A stretch of DNA of 64,000 bases from IMGVR_UViG_3300033143_006101:124001-188000, one strand, 5' to 3'; counted from the stretch's first letter, positions 1,916-10,234 are shown. Numbers and translations: made by a program. Notes: generated from the letters alone by a model not told the origin.

Positions 1916-2452
1916 ATGGTAAAAGGAACTAAAACACTTCTCGCCAGAAGAGAAGGTAAAGATTATTTCTTTACATATCTTGTAGAAGATCAAGATGAAA
2001 ATAGTTTGTATGTTCGTGCTTATCCTATAGGCGGTGGACATGAGTTTAAAATTCCCCGCAAAGATATTGTATCTATGGATGCTGTTGTACCAAGAACAAT
2101 AAGAAAGAAGAAAGTAGGATTTGACGAATCTCAATGGGGAATATATGATGCATATGTATTCGATAACAATTATTGGAATGGTTGGTTGCAGCCATTTTTA
2201 GAAAGAGAAGCAGTTAAACAATTTGTTGATGAACAAAATAAATTGGATGAAGATTACACAGACCTTGCATACCGATTTGAAAACAATGTATTATATATTA
2301 ACTATAAAGAGTACGACCAGAGCGAAGAAATAGAAGCTACTACTATTGAGTATGAAGATAAGGAAATCAAAGTATGGGATGTTTCTTTAGGACTATGCTG
2401 GATTGAATGGACCGATGAAGAGTTAGAAAATGAAGGGGGAGAAGATGTATAA
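1916..2452 (+). CDS. hypothetical protein
   Basis: ORF with AGGAGG RBS; 'YWNGWLQP' motif. Confidence 0.7.
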   Translation: MVKGTKTLLARREGKDYFFTYLVEDQDENSLYVRAYPIGGGHEFKIPRKDIVSMDAVVPRTIRKKKVGFDESQWGIYDAYVFDNNYWNGWLQPFLEREAVKQFVDEQNKLDEDYTDLAYRFENNVLYINYKEYDQSEEIEATTIEYEDKEIKVWDVSLGLCWIEWTDEELENEGGEDV

Positions 2453-3209
2453 TTTCCTTGATTTATTCTCTGGTATAGGTGCATTCCCTCTCGGTGCTCA
2501 TTGGGCAGGCATAACTTGGAAGACACATTTCAATTCTGATATTGAATCATATGCTAATGAAATATATCAGAAACGATTTCCTGACAGTATTAATATAGGA
2601 GATATAAAGCAAGCAAACATCAGAGATCTTTTACGAATAACTGGAGATTGGGTTGTTGTTGGTGGCCCTCCCTGTCCTGCTTTTAGTGTAGCAGGAAAAG
2701 GAGGAGGATTTGACCAAGATGATTTATTCTTTGACATGTTCAAAGTATGTGAAAAGATACAACCCAAGATAATTTTAATTGAGAATGTAGAAGGATTTAC
2801 AAAGTGGAAGGAGGTATTACATAATGAGATCGAAGCTATTGGATACGAGTGGGCGGACGCCATCATTGATGCAAGGGATTTTGGAATCCCTCAAGCAAGA
2901 AGAAGGTACTTTGCAATCTGTATTCGACGAGGAAACTTGTCTGGTACACAACATATATGGAGGGTTCAAGGAGAAGAAAGTAAGAGTATTCATGGATTAC
3001 TCTCCAACTTTACGAACTCCGAAAGGCGGTGGACACCTACCATCAAAACTAAAGACGGATGGAGAGATGTCTTCGCTAACGCCAGAAGAGTGCGAGCAAA
3101 TACAAGGACTCCCCATAGGATGGACCGACTCAGATGCATAGGTAATTCAATACCACCTCAGATGACAGGTGTAATATTTCTATATTTAAAACTTAAAGGA
3201 TTTTTATAG
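2445..3209 (+). CDS. C5 cytosine DNA methyltransferase, alpha subunit (motifs I-VIII and X)
   Basis: DLFSGIG (I), GPPCPAFS (IV), ENVEG (VI), PQARRR (VIII), RLRCIGNSIPP (X); motif IX absent in this frame. Confidence 0.9.
   Translation: MYNFLDLFSGIGAFPLGAHWAGITWKTHFNSDIESYANEIYQKRFPDSINIGDIKQANIRDLLRITGDWVVVGGPPCPAFSVAGKGGGFDQDDLFFDMFKVCEKIQPKIILIENVEGFTKWKEVLHNEIEAIGYEWADAIIDARDFGIPQARRRYFAICIRRGNLSGTQHIWRVQGEESKSIHGLLSNFTNSERRWTPTIKTKDGWRDVFANARRVRANTRTPHRMDRLRCIGNSIPPQMTGVIFLYLKLKGFL
2824..3141 (+). CDS. C5 methyltransferase beta subunit, nested in alternative frame (motif IX)
   Basis: SPTLRT (TRD TL-like) and LTPEECEQIQGLPIGWTD (motif IX); own RBS AAGGAGG at ~2808. Confidence 0.75.
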   Translation: MRSKLLDTSGRTPSLMQGILESLKQEEGTLQSVFDEETCLVHNIYGGFKEKKVRVFMDYSPTLRTPKGGGHLPSKLKTDGEMSSLTPEECEQIQGLPIGWTDSDA

Positions 3210-3256: not shown

Positions 3257-3484
3257 ATGAGTTCTAAAATAGACAAGGAGAGGACCCAAGAGAGGGTATC
3301 GAACCTTAGATTAAGTATTCTTGATCAAGCAACCATTATACAATTACCTAAAAAATATAAAGTGGAACTATATAAGCATTCCCCCATTGCTTTTATTACT
3401 AATAAGGAAAATGGGAAAAGAACGGTAGTTCCTGTAGTTTCATTAAAGGATGTTAAACGAGCACTGTTAGAATTAGATGTGTAA
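3257..3484 (+). CDS. hypothetical protein
   Basis: ORF with AAGGAGG RBS. Confidence 0.65.
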   Translation: MSSKIDKERTQERVSNLRLSILDQATIIQLPKKYKVELYKHSPIAFITNKENGKRTVVPVVSLKDVKRALLELDV

Positions 3485-3541: not shown

Positions 3542-4420
3542 ATGTTATTAACTAATAGTTACTTTTCAGGTGCGGGATTATTTGAGATAGGACTCCAGCA
3601 AGGAGGACTAGCACTCCAGCAAAGCTTTGAACTTGATGAGAAGTGCTGCAATACCCACAAGCATAATTTTAATCATGCAGTAGTACAATCAGATATTACA
3701 CAGAAGTTAGCATCAGAGGAGAAAGAGTGTGATGTAATGGTTGCAACTTATCCTTGTAATAAATATTCACCCATTGCTGATATACATGGGGCACGTACCG
3801 GAGACGATTTGTTTCTACATTTCTTCAGGCATATAGCTTTGAAGAAGCCTGAGATTTATGTTGTAGAGAATGTACCCGGGATGAAAAAGTTTCCAGTAGT
3901 TATGGAAGCAATGACTAAACTACCTGATTATTATGTATCAGTATTCTGCCCAGTTGAAACCGAAAATTGGTTACCACAACGCAGGAAGAGATTGATACTG
4001 ATTGGTTCAAGACAGCACTTTCAATGGAGAGAACCAGAACAAGAAAAGAGAATTAAGCTAAAGGATATCTTAGAAGAGAATCCAGAAGTTAATATAGTCA
4101 AAGCTATTGGACAGAGAATGTCCGGTAAATATAGGGACATGCCTATCATTAGTGATCCTAAGAAGGATGATATAGCTCCCACTTGTGTAGCTCATTACTC
4201 TAAAGATTTATCTACTCGTCTTGTGAAAGATGATAGATATGAGTATGGAGTAAGACCATACAGTGTACGTGAGTACGCGAGATTGCAAGGAGTTCCTGAT
4301 TGGTTTGAGTTTACTGGAACAGCAGTCCAGAACTACAAAATGATTGGCAATGGAGTTCCCGTACCTATAGGCGAATGGGTAGCCAGAGAGTTACTCAGAT
4401 ACAAAAAACATAAGATGTAA
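3542..4420 (+). CDS. C5 cytosine DNA methyltransferase (single chain)
   Basis: SYFSGAG, YPCNKYS, ENVPG, PQRRKR, SVREYARLQGVP, IGNGVP. Confidence 0.92.
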   Translation: MLLTNSYFSGAGLFEIGLQQGGLALQQSFELDEKCCNTHKHNFNHAVVQSDITQKLASEEKECDVMVATYPCNKYSPIADIHGARTGDDLFLHFFRHIALKKPEIYVVENVPGMKKFPVVMEAMTKLPDYYVSVFCPVETENWLPQRRKRLILIGSRQHFQWREPEQEKRIKLKDILEENPEVNIVKAIGQRMSGKYRDMPIISDPKKDDIAPTCVAHYSKDLSTRLVKDDRYEYGVRPYSVREYARLQGVPDWFEFTGTAVQNYKMIGNGVPVPIGEWVARELLRYKKHKM

Positions 4421-7856: not shown

Positions 7857-7918
7857 GTTACATGAACGGTTGGACGCAGGAGGGTTCGATTCCCTCCCGT
7901 TTGAATGGAGGTAAATAT

Positions 7919-9319
7919 ATGATTATAGGAAAAGGTTCAAAAAACATAACATTATTTACCCAAATGGCTAATCGCCATGGGATTGTTTCAGGAGCAACAG
8001 GAACTGGGAAAACAGTCTCACTGCAAGTAATTACAGAACAATTTAGCAAAGCTGGAGTACCAGTCTTCTTAGTTGATGTAAAAGGAGACTTGGCCGGTAT
8101 AGCTAAAAGGGGGCAACTACAAGATAAAGTTAAAGAAAGAGTACAAGAACTCGAGATGACAACATTTAAAACTGAGGCGTGCCCGGTTATATTCTGGGAC
8201 ATGTTTGGAGATAATGGTCATCCAATCAGAGCATCTATTTCTGATATGGGATCATTATTGCTAGGCAGACTGTTAAGTTTGAGCCCAACCCAAGTAGGAA
8301 CACTTACACAAATATTTAAAATAGCAGAAGATTATGATTTGCCTTTGATAAAGTTGAGAGATCTTCAATCAGTAGCACAATACGTTGAACTCTTTGCAAA
8401 GGATTTTGCAGAAGAATATGGAAAAATATCAACAGCAAGTATTGGTGCAATCTTAAGAGGATTGCTAGTACTGGAAACTGAAGAGGTTAATAAACTCTTT
8501 GGAGAACCCAAACTTAGGATACTTGATCTGATGAGAATGAAAGATGGTAGAGGAATAGTAAATATCCTCTCAGCAGAAAAACTTATTACTAAACCAAAAG
8601 TATATACGACCTTCTTACTGTGGTTGTTATCAGAATTGTATACTAAATTACCTGAAGTGGGAGACAGAGAAAAACCTCAATTAGTGTTCTTCTTTGATGA
8701 AGCACACCTTCTCTTTGAGGACGCACCTAAAGTACTACTTGAAAAAGTAGAACAAGTTATTAGACTGATAAGGTCTAAAGGTGTTGGTATATTCTTTGTT
8801 ACCCAAAGTCCAGCAGATATTCCTACGAATGTCTTAGGACAACTTGGTAATAGAGTACAGCATGCTCTAAGAGCTTATACTCCTAAAGATTCTAAAGCAG
8901 TAAGAATAATGGCACAGACATTTAGAAGTAATCCTAAAATAAATGTCGAGCAAGCTATTACTCAACTGAAAGTAGGAGAAGCTCTAGTATCATTATTAGA
9001 TGAAAATGGTACACCTGAAATTGTTGAACGAGTTTTGATGCATCCACCATCAAGTCAAATAGGTCCAATTAGTAATGAAGAAAGAGCACAACTAATGAAG
9101 TGCTCCCCTTTGCATGAAGTATATGAAAGAGAGATCAATGCTAAAGCAGCATATCACATTATTAAAAACATACGCGAAGAGCAAAAGAGAGAAACACAAT
9201 TAAAACCGAAAACCAGAAAAGGGAAGCAACCAGAAAATCTAATGGAAACAGTAATGAATACCTTTGCAAAATCAAACAGTTCATCACTAGGAAGTAAGAT
9301 CTTTAAGTTGTTAAAATGA
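7919..9319 (+). CDS. HerA/FtsK-like ATPase, DUF853 (YjgR-like)
   Basis: ANRHGIVSGATGTGKT, DVKGDL, FFDEAHLLF, RLIRSKGVG, LGNRVQHALRA; start at ATG after GGAGG. Confidence 0.92.
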   Translation: MIIGKGSKNITLFTQMANRHGIVSGATGTGKTVSLQVITEQFSKAGVPVFLVDVKGDLAGIAKRGQLQDKVKERVQELEMTTFKTEACPVIFWDMFGDNGHPIRASISDMGSLLLGRLLSLSPTQVGTLTQIFKIAEDYDLPLIKLRDLQSVAQYVELFAKDFAEEYGKISTASIGAILRGLLVLETEEVNKLFGEPKLRILDLMRMKDGRGIVNILSAEKLITKPKVYTTFLLWLLSELYTKLPEVGDREKPQLVFFFDEAHLLFEDAPKVLLEKVEQVIRLIRSKGVGIFFVTQSPADIPTNVLGQLGNRVQHALRAYTPKDSKAVRIMAQTFRSNPKINVEQAITQLKVGEALVSLLDENGTPEIVERVLMHPPSSQIGPISNEERAQLMKCSPLHEVYEREINAKAAYHIIKNIREEQKRETQLKPKTRKGKQPENLMETVMNTFAKSNSSSLGSKIFKLLK

Positions 9320-9533: not shown

Positions 9534-9653
9534 ATGAAAAAATGGATTAAAAAAGAAAACATCAACAAATTAGTTCAAAAATACAATGTTAGCTATAATT
9601 GTATTTATAGAATAAAAAAGGGGGAAAGATGGAAACACCTATTAAACCAATAA
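9534..9653 (+). pseudogene. 39-aa remnant resembling the C-terminal HTH of HNH homing endonucleases
   Basis: KYNVSYNCIYRIKKGERWKH resembles KYGVTYRNIYDIKNGKIWKH at the end of the HNH at 35891. Confidence 0.5.
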
Positions 9654-10234
9654 AAAAATATAATATTATTTACGCTGACTGTCCATGGAAATTTAATAAT
9701 AAGAATACTGGAGGTAGCATGACATCAGGTTCTGCTAATCAATACAATGTATTATCTGTAGAAGAATTATGTAAATTACCTATAGAAAAAATAATAGCTG
9801 ACGACTCTATCTTATTTTCTTGGTGGGTAGGAAGTATGGTAGAGGAAGCCATCACAGTAGCCAGAGCTTGGGGATTTAAACTTAAAACTATGTCTGGATT
9901 TACTTGGGTCAAGAAAACAAAGAACTGGAAAGACTGGTTCGGTATGGGATTCTGGACACGACAGGGAACAGAAAATATATTGATAGCTACCAGAGGACAG
10001 CCAGTACGACGAGCCGCTAATGTTCGACAAGTACAACCACTGGAATCATTTAATGAATCTGTTGAGGCTCGTAACAAAGGGCATTCAATCAAACCAGATT
10101 TATTTAGAGATAAAATTGTAGAACTATGCGGTGATTTACCCCGCATTGAATTATTTGCGAGGGAATCGAACCCTGGATGGGATGTCTGGGGTAAAGAAGT
10201 GCAATCTTCTATTGATTTTTCTAAGTTAATGTAG
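9629..10234 (+). CDS. MT-A70 family adenine methyltransferase
   Basis: IIYADCPW (DPPW variant), AWGF, FTWVK, GMGFWTR, HSIKP, RIELFAR, GWDVWG. Confidence 0.9.
   Translation: METPIKPIKKYNIIYADCPWKFNNKNTGGSMTSGSANQYNVLSVEELCKLPIEKIIADDSILFSWWVGSMVEEAITVARAWGFKLKTMSGFTWVKKTKNWKDWFGMGFWTRQGTENILIATRGQPVRRAANVRQVQPLESFNESVEARNKGHSIKPDLFRDKIVELCGDLPRIELFARESNPGWDVWGKEVQSSIDFSKLM

What the first reader, a model, noticed from the sequence alone, without database searches (positions are those of the whole stretch)
2445..3209. Two-frame C5 methyltransferase: motif IX encoded by a nested overlapping gene
Seen: the main frame has motifs I-VIII and X but not IX. A fully nested ORF (2824-3141) with its own AAGGAGG RBS encodes PTL and LTPEECEQIQGLP. 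Both frames are open for over 300 nt. Known: M.EcoHK31I has this alpha/beta alternative-frame architecture. Annotation pipelines usually miss the beta gene.
Basis: partly seen in the sequence, partly recalled or inferred. Interest (0 to 1): 0.6.

Follow-up and report, generated by a model that had tools for sequence, protein, structure and literature searches.

The report
Two-frame split cytosine methyltransferase gene
A jumbo-phage DNA cytosine methyltransferase is written in two overlapping reading frames that most likely give two proteins which assemble into one enzyme, and the same hidden layout turns up in many other phage methyltransferase genes whose inner gene is almost never annotated.

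Summary
ORF alpha (2445-3209, +) has C5-methyltransferase motifs I-VIII and X but lacks IX. The nested +1 ORF beta (2824-3141) has a strong ribosome-binding site 8 nt upstream and carries a target-recognition block plus motif IX.

It is not an assembly artefact. All 28 distinct relatives (41-54% identical, independent marine contigs) keep both frames open. Codon-position variability flips to the beta frame across the overlap. Given the beta protein, random synonymous codons leave alpha open in under 0.5% of trials.

Beta residues 26-102 are 44-54% identical to the segment between motifs VIII and X of ordinary single-chain enzymes. A complex model scores 0.89 against 0.01 for the best control.

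The best reading is an M.EcoHK31I-type alpha/beta heterodimer. Here beta also carries the recognition block, and no nuclease gene was recognised beside it.

Every distant relative lacking an in-frame motif IX that I examined at DNA level has the same +1 gene (15 loci, 14 distinct sequences). These include phages of Mycobacterium, Lactobacillus, Bacillus, Bacteroides, Porphyromonas and Paenibacillus. Only the Paenibacillus records annotate it.

Expression, activity and homology to M.EcoHK31I itself are untested. Reads could not be checked.

The parts
2445..3209 (+). alpha gene (254 aa): C5 methyltransferase large domain with motifs I-VIII, then a 68-residue stretch (166-233) that folds poorly on its own and lies within the overlap with beta, then motif X
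   Evidence: ORF. PF00145 E 2e-41 to profile positions 1-196 of 324. TIGR00675. About 45 full-length homologues. The AlphaFold model matches M.HhaI, M.HaeIII and DNMT2 over about 170 columns, with pLDDT below 50 over residues 166-233.
2434..2442 (+). purine-rich Shine-Dalgarno-like stretch before the alpha ATG; the alpha start overlaps the stop (2450-2452) of upstream ORF 1916-2452
   Evidence: Read directly from the sequence.
2673..2675 (+). codon of the catalytic cysteine (Cys77) in motif IV
   Evidence: Invariant column C77 in alignment A1.
2785..2790 (+). beta-frame ATG inside alpha's ENV motif, followed at once by TAG. In most relatives this ATG opens into a longer beta N-terminus; here it is closed off.
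   Evidence: Sequence. Beta-frame alignment and start-codon survey of relatives.
2808..2815 (+). ribosome-binding site AAGGAGGT of beta, 8 nt before the ATG; the next gene (3257) has the same AAGGAGGTATTA string before its ATG, at a shorter spacing
2824..3141 (+). beta gene (105 aa), +1 frame, wholly inside alpha; the dual-coding stretch
   Evidence: Complex model. Stand-alone called relatives P0121-P0124.
2941..3042 (+). beta residues 40-73: conserved target-recognition block (HNIYGGFKEKK ... SPTLRTPKGGGH)
   Evidence: 44-54% identical to the same block lying in frame in single-chain methyltransferases P0131, P0132 and P0151. Nearly invariant within the family.
3076..3129 (+). beta residues 85-102: motif IX
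   Evidence: The profile hits the TRD-plus-IX region of DNMT3A/3B at E about 0.02. In the model it contacts alpha motif X and the motif I side.
3141..3161 (+). alpha motif X (GNSIPPQ); it begins on the last base of the beta stop codon
   Evidence: G233, N234 and P238 are invariant.

Best explanation
The locus encodes a heterodimeric DNA (cytosine-5) methyltransferase from two overlapping genes on one mRNA. Ribosomes starting at 2445 make alpha, which is the complete AdoMet-binding and catalytic large domain. It contains motifs I-VIII, then 68 residues read 'out of register' across the overlap, then motif X, which closes the large domain. Ribosomes starting at the internal site (AAGGAGGT, ATG 2824) read the +1 frame and make beta. 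Beta carries the conserved block of the small, DNA-recognising domain plus motif IX. Beta docks onto alpha with its motif IX helix against motif X and the motif I side, and alpha's overlap stretch wraps around it, which restores an ordinary C5 methyltransferase architecture. The enzyme most likely methylates the phage's own DNA as an orphan, anti-restriction methyltransferase. Shown here: both frames are open, conserved and under selection; beta is homologous to the TRD-plus-IX segment of single-chain enzymes; and the internal start signal is present. Inferred: translation of beta, heterodimer formation (supported only by a model), activity, target sequence and biological role.
For: (1) All 28 distinct family members from independent viral and metagenome contigs keep a +1 open run of 105-177 codons, while +2 and the +1 frame outside the overlap are full of stops. 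(2) Beta-frame products align with 61% mean column identity and an invariant TRD and motif IX core. (3) The most variable codon position is alpha position 3 in the alpha-only parts (0.53 and 0.60). Over alpha residues 171-231 it switches to alpha position 1, which is beta position 3 (0.395, against 0.187 for alpha position 3). Over residues 128-170 both frames look constrained (0.27). (4) Given the beta protein, random synonymous codons leave the alpha frame open with P below 0.005, and below 2e-4 for most sequences; it is open up to alpha's own stop codon in all 28, so read-through to motif X is selected. (5) Diversity at conserved four-fold sites is 0.58 in alpha-only sequence, 0.44 in beta over the overlap and 0.40 in alpha over the overlap; the Gly codon that makes alpha Trp196 is GGT in 26 of 28. 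(6) Beta residues 26-102 are 44-54% identical (E 1e-24 to 1e-25) to positions about 200-278 of single-chain enzymes, and alpha residues 3-161 match their N-terminal parts. (7) complex prediction gives ipSAE 0.89 (three runs, 0.88-0.89) against a best control of 0.01. Partner pLDDT is at least 79 and contacts agree at 92% or more. The mark was reached by 58 of 80 solved complexes and 2 of 110 mismatched pairs; these counts hold only roughly because my own alignments were used. The interface is alpha 135-153 and 189-239 plus residues 11, 16, 40 and 44, against beta motif IX and the TL block. (8) Alpha alone models with pLDDT below 50 over 166-233, as expected for a stretch that needs a partner. 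(9) Precedent: M.EcoHK31I needs alpha and beta, with beta nested in another frame of alpha (PMC2836561, PMC3404938). (10) The same +1 gene is present in 15 distant loci (14 distinct sequences) examined at DNA level, with significant openness in both directions in the six cultured-phage genes that were tested.
Against: There is no direct evidence of translation of beta or of enzyme activity. The beta start is not conserved as a codon: most relatives have Lys where the window has Met. They must start either further upstream, at ATG or GTG 24 codons earlier with an AAGGA, or at the ATG inside ENV, or else at a TTG 5 codons further downstream preceded by GAGGT. Openness of beta upstream of the TRD block is only weakly significant within the close family (P 0.06-0.48 per sequence). 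The complex model could pass from memory of single-chain methyltransferase folds, so it shows likeness to a split C5 enzyme rather than binding. The extra constraint on alpha's amino acids in the overlap is modest.
Confidence: 0.8

Rival explanations
1. One polypeptide is made by two programmed ribosomal frameshifts, +1 after motif VIII and -1 after motif IX, which stitch I-VIII, TRD-IX and X into a normal single chain.
For: Codon periodicity switches from alpha to beta and back at about the places where a stitched chain would change frame. The stitched order is colinear with single-chain relatives.
Against: The alpha frame is kept open over about 70 codons that a frameshifting ribosome would never read (P below 0.005 per sequence). 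The beta frame is open well upstream of any possible shift site, for about 100 codons in distant relatives (P 0.0008-0.03). The window has a strong internal ribosome-binding site and ATG. No slippery heptamer, in-frame stop or rare-codon pause is visible at either junction in the window, by reading the sequence. The frameshifting review that was searched reports no such methyltransferase case.
Confidence: 0.05
2. Assembly or sequencing artefact: two compensating indels in the contig split a normal single-chain gene.
For: None beyond the fact that the contig is metagenome-derived. Reads could not be checked.
Against: The identical two-frame layout is present in 28 distinct sequences from independent assemblies. 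It is also present in cultured, individually sequenced phages. The alpha-frame amino-acid sequence across the overlap is itself conserved.
Confidence: 0.01
3. Decaying or inert gene: an old double frameshift inactivated the enzyme, and the beta frame is an untranslated relic of the original coding frame.
For: Annotation pipelines see only alpha, and beta has no Pfam or NCBIfam family.
Against: A relic frame would collect stops and lose its sequence. Instead it carries the main purifying-selection signal across 41-54% divergent relatives. Alpha stays open against strong odds. The layout persists across phages of several bacterial phyla.
Confidence: 0.03
4. Three-part or alternative products. 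For example, beta continues into motif X through a -1 shift, giving an M.AquI-like subunit with TRD, IX and X. Alternatively, motif X is made as a separate short peptide, and the alpha read-through stretch has no role.
For: M.AquI shows that a subunit with IX-X is workable (PMC3404938). A called protein, P0136, runs from a +1 'shadow' N-terminal part straight into TRD-IX-X in one frame.
Against: Selection for an open alpha frame across the overlap and conserved alpha residues there, such as Trp196, Lys203, Trp206 and Arg207, argue that alpha is read through. No slippery site is visible at the IX/X junction. The Met before motif X is not conserved in the family.
Confidence: 0.05

Closest known systems
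M.EcoHK31I (E. coli, YGGCCR) alpha/beta C5 methyltransferase
   Same: Alpha has motifs I-VIII and X. Beta has motif IX and is encoded entirely inside alpha in another reading frame. Both chains are needed for activity, and the N-terminal part of beta is dispensable or modulatory (PMC2836561, PMC3404938). The window matches this gene layout point for point.
   Different: The literature places the predicted TRD of M.EcoHK31I in alpha. Here the block homologous to single-chain TRDs lies in beta. M.EcoHK31I belongs to a restriction-modification pair, whereas no nuclease was recognised beside this gene in a 253-kb phage. Sequence homology to M.EcoHK31I could not be tested, because the original paper and the sequence are not held and no source name pointing to it was found.
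M.AquI (CYCGRG), two-subunit C5 methyltransferase
   Same: A natural C5 enzyme built from two polypeptides, with the split inside the variable region (PMC3404938).
   Different: The small subunit of M.AquI carries the distal TRD plus motifs IX and X. Here motif X stays on alpha, and beta lies wholly nested inside alpha in another reading frame.
Paenibacillus larvae phage methyltransferase pairs (Lily gp62/gp63, Shelly gp55/gp56)
   Same: An outer C5 methyltransferase gene lacking motif IX, with an inner +1 gene ending in motif IX just before the outer motif X. GenBank annotates the inner ORF as 'internal gene'.
   Different: They are only distantly related. Their inner gene is longer (163-234 aa), starts over motif IV, and has a different recognition block (PTPTAS type). 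PMC6070908 lists both as cytosine methyltransferases without interpreting the layout.
Single-chain C5 methyltransferases with the same recognition block (P0131, P0132, P0151)
   Same: They share the HNIYGGFKEKK ... SPTIRT.KGGGH ... motif IX segment at 44-54% identity, and the N-terminal catalytic part is homologous to alpha.
   Different: In them everything is in one frame.
Fragment complementation of split M.HhaI, M.BspRI, M.BsuRI and M.SssI
   Same: It shows that C5 methyltransferase halves can assemble non-covalently into an active enzyme (PMC3404938).
   Different: Those splits are artificial and are not encoded in overlapping frames.

Membership tests
DNA (cytosine-5) methyltransferase, PF00145 / TIGR00675 | Motifs I (FxGxG), IV (PC with catalytic Cys), VI (ENV) and VIII (QxRxR) in order | tested here: met
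   Alpha matches PF00145 at E 2e-41 and TIGR00675 at E 4e-39. The invariant columns include G10, G12, P76, C77, E113, N114, V115, Q150, R152 and R154. The fold matches M.HhaI and M.HaeIII.
DNA (cytosine-5) methyltransferase, PF00145 / TIGR00675 | Motifs IX and X present in the same chain | tested here: not met
   Motif X is in alpha and motif IX only in beta. The Pfam alignment of alpha stops at profile position 196 of 324.
M.EcoHK31I-type nested alpha/beta methyltransferase | Alpha carries I-VIII and X and lacks IX | tested here: met
M.EcoHK31I-type nested alpha/beta methyltransferase | Beta is encoded wholly within alpha in another frame and carries motif IX | tested here: met
   Beta (2824-3141) lies inside alpha (2445-3209) in the +1 frame. 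Motif IX homology is shown.
M.EcoHK31I-type nested alpha/beta methyltransferase | TRD located on alpha (as described for M.EcoHK31I) | tested here: not met
   The block homologous to single-chain TRDs is on beta, residues 40-73. The corresponding stretch of alpha has pLDDT below 50.
M.EcoHK31I-type nested alpha/beta methyltransferase | Both polypeptides are made and both are required for methylation | not testable with these tools
   Only indirect support: selection on both frames, the internal ribosome-binding site, and the complex model at 0.89 against 0.01.
M.EcoHK31I-type nested alpha/beta methyltransferase | Sequence homology to M.EcoHK31I alpha and beta themselves | not tested
PMC306636 is not held, and no hit was named EcoHK31I.
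Type II restriction-modification system | A cognate restriction endonuclease gene next to the methyltransferase | tested here: inconclusive
   The neighbours 1386-1865, 1916-2452 and 3257-3484 have no Pfam family. The next gene is a second C5 methyltransferase. A novel nuclease cannot be excluded.

The most novel reading that the evidence does not exclude
The nested alpha/beta layout is not a curiosity of one E. coli enzyme. It is the conserved gene structure of a large, old clade of phage and mobile-element C5 methyltransferases, namely those whose annotated product lacks motif IX and ends in a G.P.R.DRL..LGN motif X. In that clade a hidden +1 gene, running from about motif IV to motif X, supplies the DNA-recognising block and motif IX. 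Different recognition modules (the PTPTAS type and the HNIYGG/SPTIRT type) have been exchanged inside the hidden frame. If so, a large share of phage 'DNA methyltransferase' annotations describe only half of an enzyme.
Probability: 0.5. Interest if true: 0.75.

Novelty: new member of a known kind. Interest (0 to 1): 0.62.

Why it matters
Reviews name only two natural two-polypeptide C5 methyltransferases (PMC3404938). This locus adds a well-supported third lineage, and it sits in a complete 253-kb phage genome. Long, same-strand, fully nested dual coding with selection on both frames is rare in prokaryotic viruses.

There is also a practical consequence. In five of the seven cultured-phage records I inspected, and in both gene-called contigs (L116, L117), only the outer frame is called. 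Beta has no Pfam or NCBIfam model. Methylome predictions, specificity assignment from the TRD, and heterologous expression of such phage methyltransferases will therefore fail or mislead unless the inner gene is included.

If the wider-clade reading holds, one profile for beta would correct many annotations. It would also give a natural set of self-assembling split methyltransferases.

Tried and rejected
- **DNA similarity to GenBank phages:** no match. tblastn of beta against phages gave only two weak hits.
- **Relatives in one genome for each of 185,579 prokaryote species:** none confirmed. The close family is known only from viral and metagenome contigs.
- **Pfam on beta alone:** nothing meaningful (a chance IL6 hit at E 0.11). 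Pfam and NCBIfam on 13 diverse beta-type products gave nothing.
- **Reads and expression:** There is no read-level check for indels and no RNA evidence.
- **Original M.EcoHK31I paper (PMC306636):** not held. No supplements are held for PMC2836561. A word-index search with a diverse beta alignment returned 69 proteins, none named EcoHK31I, so homology to the type enzyme stays open.
- **Literature searches for a described phage two-frame C5 methyltransferase:** nothing beyond M.EcoHK31I and M.AquI. The library is incomplete, so this is weak evidence of novelty.
- **A conserved ATG as the beta start:** rejected, because the start codon position varies among relatives.
- **A crude motif IX regex on distant alpha homologues** (3 of 76, P0045-P0120, have it in frame): this is only a pointer. 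Four phage genes that match only alpha residues 1-195 proved to be ordinary single-chain enzymes, so the two-frame layout is not universal among hits.

Full report
**What is there**

The window is part of a 252,876-bp virus record with direct terminal repeats, rated complete. It is AT-rich, at 33.6% GC.

On the + strand, an ORF runs from ATG 2445 to the stop at 3207-3209 (254 aa). It carries the cytosine-5 methyltransferase motifs in order:
- motif I (FSGIG);
- motif IV, with the catalytic Cys77;
- motif VI (ENV);
- motif VIII (QARRRYF);
- after a 70-residue gap, motif X (GNSIPPQ).

There is no motif IX. Pfam PF00145 aligns only to profile positions 1-196 of 324.

A second ORF lies wholly inside it in the +1 frame, at 2824-3141 (105 aa). 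AAGGAGGT lies 8 nt before its ATG. The next gene downstream (3257) has the same AAGGAGGTATTA string before its own ATG, at a shorter spacing. This inner ORF encodes SPTL and then the motif IX stretch LTPEECEQIQGLPIGWTD.

Among 102 alternative frames of the 51 long ORFs in the window, this 116-codon open run is the only one of 100 codons or more. The next is 77 and the median is 32.

**It is not an artefact or a wreck**

A protein search with alpha found about 45 full-length relatives at 41-54% identity. All are about 250 aa, and they align across the whole length, including the stretch that overlaps beta.

I fetched DNA for relatives from viral and metagenome contigs. This gave 28 distinct sequences, all from marine or other environmental assemblies. 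No relative was confirmed in one genome for each of 185,579 prokaryote species.

Every one of the 28 has a +1 open run of 105-177 codons over the same region. The +2 frame, and the +1 frame elsewhere, are full of stops. The +1 products align well, with 61% mean column identity and an invariant core.

Two compensating assembly indels cannot recur in 28 independent assemblies. A dead frame would not stay open and conserved at this level of divergence.

**Selection acts on both frames**

On a codon alignment, the most variable position in the alpha-only parts is alpha position 3 (0.53 and 0.60). Over alpha residues 171-231 the maximum moves to alpha position 1, which is beta position 3 (0.395). 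Alpha position 3 becomes the least variable there (0.187). Over residues 128-170, where beta overlaps alpha motifs VII-VIII, alpha position 3 drops to 0.27.

So beta is the dominant coding frame across the distal overlap. Alpha is nevertheless kept open. With the beta protein fixed and synonymous codons drawn at random, the alpha frame stays open with P below 0.005, and below 2e-4 for most sequences. It is in fact open up to alpha's own stop codon in all 28.

That is the signature expected if ribosomes must read alpha through to motif X. It is not expected if ribosomes leave the alpha frame.

Diversity at conserved four-fold sites falls from 0.58 in alpha-only sequence to 0.44 (beta over the overlap) and 0.40 (alpha over the overlap). 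The Gly codon that creates alpha Trp196 is GGT in 26 of 28 sequences. Some alpha residues in the overlap are therefore constrained too, though modestly.

**What beta is**

A profile of beta searched against 1.84 billion representative proteins found 209 hits.
- The top four are stand-alone beta-type ORFs.
- The next are ordinary single-chain C5 methyltransferases in which profile positions about 35-104 lie in frame between motifs VIII and X.

BLASTP shows that beta residues 26-102 are 44-54% identical (E 1e-24 to 1e-25) to positions about 200-278 of three such enzymes. Alpha residues 3-161 match their N-terminal parts. Against solved structures the profile weakly hits the TRD-plus-IX region of DNMT3A/3B (E about 0.02).

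Beta is therefore the conserved recognition block (the region containing the T-L motif) plus motif IX of a normal methyltransferase lineage, moved into the +1 frame.

**Do the two chains fit together?**

Complex prediction with my own alignments gave ipSAE 0.89 (three runs, 0.88-0.89), against a best control of 0.01. Partner pLDDT was at least 79, and contacts agreed at 92% or more. The mark was reached by 58 of 80 solved complexes and by 2 of 110 mismatched pairs; these counts hold only roughly here because my own alignments were used.

In the model:
- beta's motif IX touches alpha motif X (residues 228-238) and the motif I side (residues 11, 16, 40, 44);
- beta's TL block touches motifs VII-VIII;
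- alpha's overlap stretch (189-216) lies on beta.

Alpha folded alone has a confident large domain that matches M.HhaI, M.HaeIII and DNMT2, but pLDDT is below 50 over residues 166-233.

This supports likeness to a split C5 enzyme. It may draw on memory of single-chain folds, and it does not prove binding.

**Start of beta**

In the window the start is clear. An ancestral beta-frame ATG inside ENV (2785) is followed at once by TAG (2788-2790). The next ATG, at 2824, has the strong ribosome-binding site.

Most relatives have Lys at that codon. They can start in one of three places:
- 24 codons further upstream, at an ATG or GTG preceded by AAGGA;
- at the ATG inside ENV;
- at a TTG five codons downstream, preceded by GAGGT.

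A variable and partly dispensable N-terminus echoes M.EcoHK31I. There, alternative internal Met codons support activity, and N-terminal deletions of beta weaken association gradually (PMC2836561).

**Mechanism and rivals**

The best-supported reading is two polypeptides from overlapping genes that assemble into one enzyme, as detailed under the best explanation.

Against a double programmed frameshift:
- the selected openness of alpha across the overlap;
- openness of beta far upstream of any possible shift site;
- the internal ribosome-binding site;
- the absence of slippery or pausing signals at the junctions.

The pseudogene and artefact readings are excluded by conservation and selection. 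Variants with three products cannot be excluded, but they do not explain why alpha stays open.

The biological role is inferred from context only. I take it to be self-methylation against host restriction. Three methyltransferase genes lie within 8 kb, and no nuclease was recognised.

**Comparison with what is known**

The literature names two natural two-polypeptide C5 methyltransferases, M.AquI and M.EcoHK31I. Only in M.EcoHK31I is beta nested in another frame of alpha, with alpha carrying I-VIII and X and beta carrying IX (PMC3404938, PMC2836561). The window meets those layout criteria.

It differs in three ways:
- the recognition block is on beta, whereas the TRD of M.EcoHK31I is assigned to alpha;
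- no partner nuclease was recognised;
- it is encoded by a phage.

I could not test homology to M.EcoHK31I itself.

**A wider pattern**

Most of the more distant alpha homologues lack an in-frame motif IX by a crude pattern test. I examined 15 such loci at DNA level (14 distinct sequences):
- four metagenomic sequences, one of them held under two locus ids (L022/L085, L024, L064, L089), plus two contig-cut loci (L096, L104) whose +1 frame shows only the recognition-type repeats, because motif IX lies beyond the fragment;
- genes of Mycobacterium phage KBG, Lactobacillus phage Lc-Nu, Bacteroides phage BS162P3, a Porphyromonas phage and Bacillus phage yong1;
- Paenibacillus phages Shelly and Lily;
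- two further randomly chosen homologues.

All but the two contig-cut loci carry, in the +1 frame, a recognition-type block followed by motif IX that ends just before or inside the outer motif X.

Openness is significant in both directions in the six cultured-phage genes that were tested. P is 0.0005-0.10 for alpha given beta, and 0.0008-0.03 for beta given alpha over about 100 upstream codons.

Only the Paenibacillus records annotate the inner ORF, as an 'internal gene'. The paper on those phages lists both products as cytosine methyltransferases without comment. PHROGs holds a family, phrog_1008, made of such +1 products.

Four phage genes that match only the N-terminal part of alpha are ordinary single-chain enzymes, so the layout marks a clade, not all relatives.

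I did not find this generalisation in the searchable literature. That library is incomplete, and REBASE could not be consulted.

**Verdict**

The locus is a new, phage-borne member of the M.EcoHK31I kind of nested alpha/beta C5 methyltransferase, with strong comparative evidence that both frames are functional. The more novel possibility is that this is the standard gene structure of a large phage methyltransferase clade. That is plausible on the sample examined, but it needs a census and one biochemical demonstration.

Noticed in passing
window 3542-4420 (+): A second, complete single-chain C5 methyltransferase (292 aa; PF00145 profile positions 6-323 of 324, with motifs IX and X in frame) lies 330 nt downstream of the alpha/beta gene.
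   Followed up: partly
window 9629-10234 (+) and 7862-9319 (+): An MT-A70 family (N6-adenine type) methyltransferase (E 1e-23) and a HerA-like helicase (PF05872, E 3e-195). This makes three DNA methyltransferase genes within about 8 kb of this jumbo-phage genome.
   Followed up: no
L118 (C. difficile phage phiC2 p73), L119 (Arthrobacter phage Pitbull gp54), L121 (Vibrio phage S4-7), L010, L059, L082: Ordinary single-chain C5 methyltransferases of the wider clade also keep the +1 frame open for 120-250 codons across motifs IV-VIII, ending in a conserved SLSDILE...KYFLS-like block. P(open given the protein) is 0.0000-0.03, though the run was chosen post hoc. Controls phiD12, L065 and L074 lack it. 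This is unexplained. It may be a further hidden product, or the substrate that lets TRD-IX move between frames.
   Followed up: partly
P0136, P0145 and P0170: These called metagenomic proteins begin in the +1 'shadow' frame of the catalytic domain. They then run in one frame either into TRD-IX-X (P0136) or back into the catalytic frame (P0170). They are either single-frameshift, M.AquI-like gene forms or sequencing errors.
   Followed up: no
L116:515-1507 compared with P0002: The first 50 or so residues of the alpha chain on this 2.5-kb contig (its product is named as a 'Candidatus Abyssubacteria' MAG protein) are nearly identical to those of P0002, the closest relative of the window's alpha. 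Yet the two carry different beta recognition blocks (PTP-repeat type versus HNIYGG/SPTIRT type). This suggests module exchange within the hidden frame.
   Followed up: no
L118:952-1902 (phiC2 p73): The annotated start lies 51 nt downstream of where the tblastn match to alpha begins. The product also ends right after motif IX, without a recognisable motif X. Either the start is mis-called or the gene is truncated.
   Followed up: no
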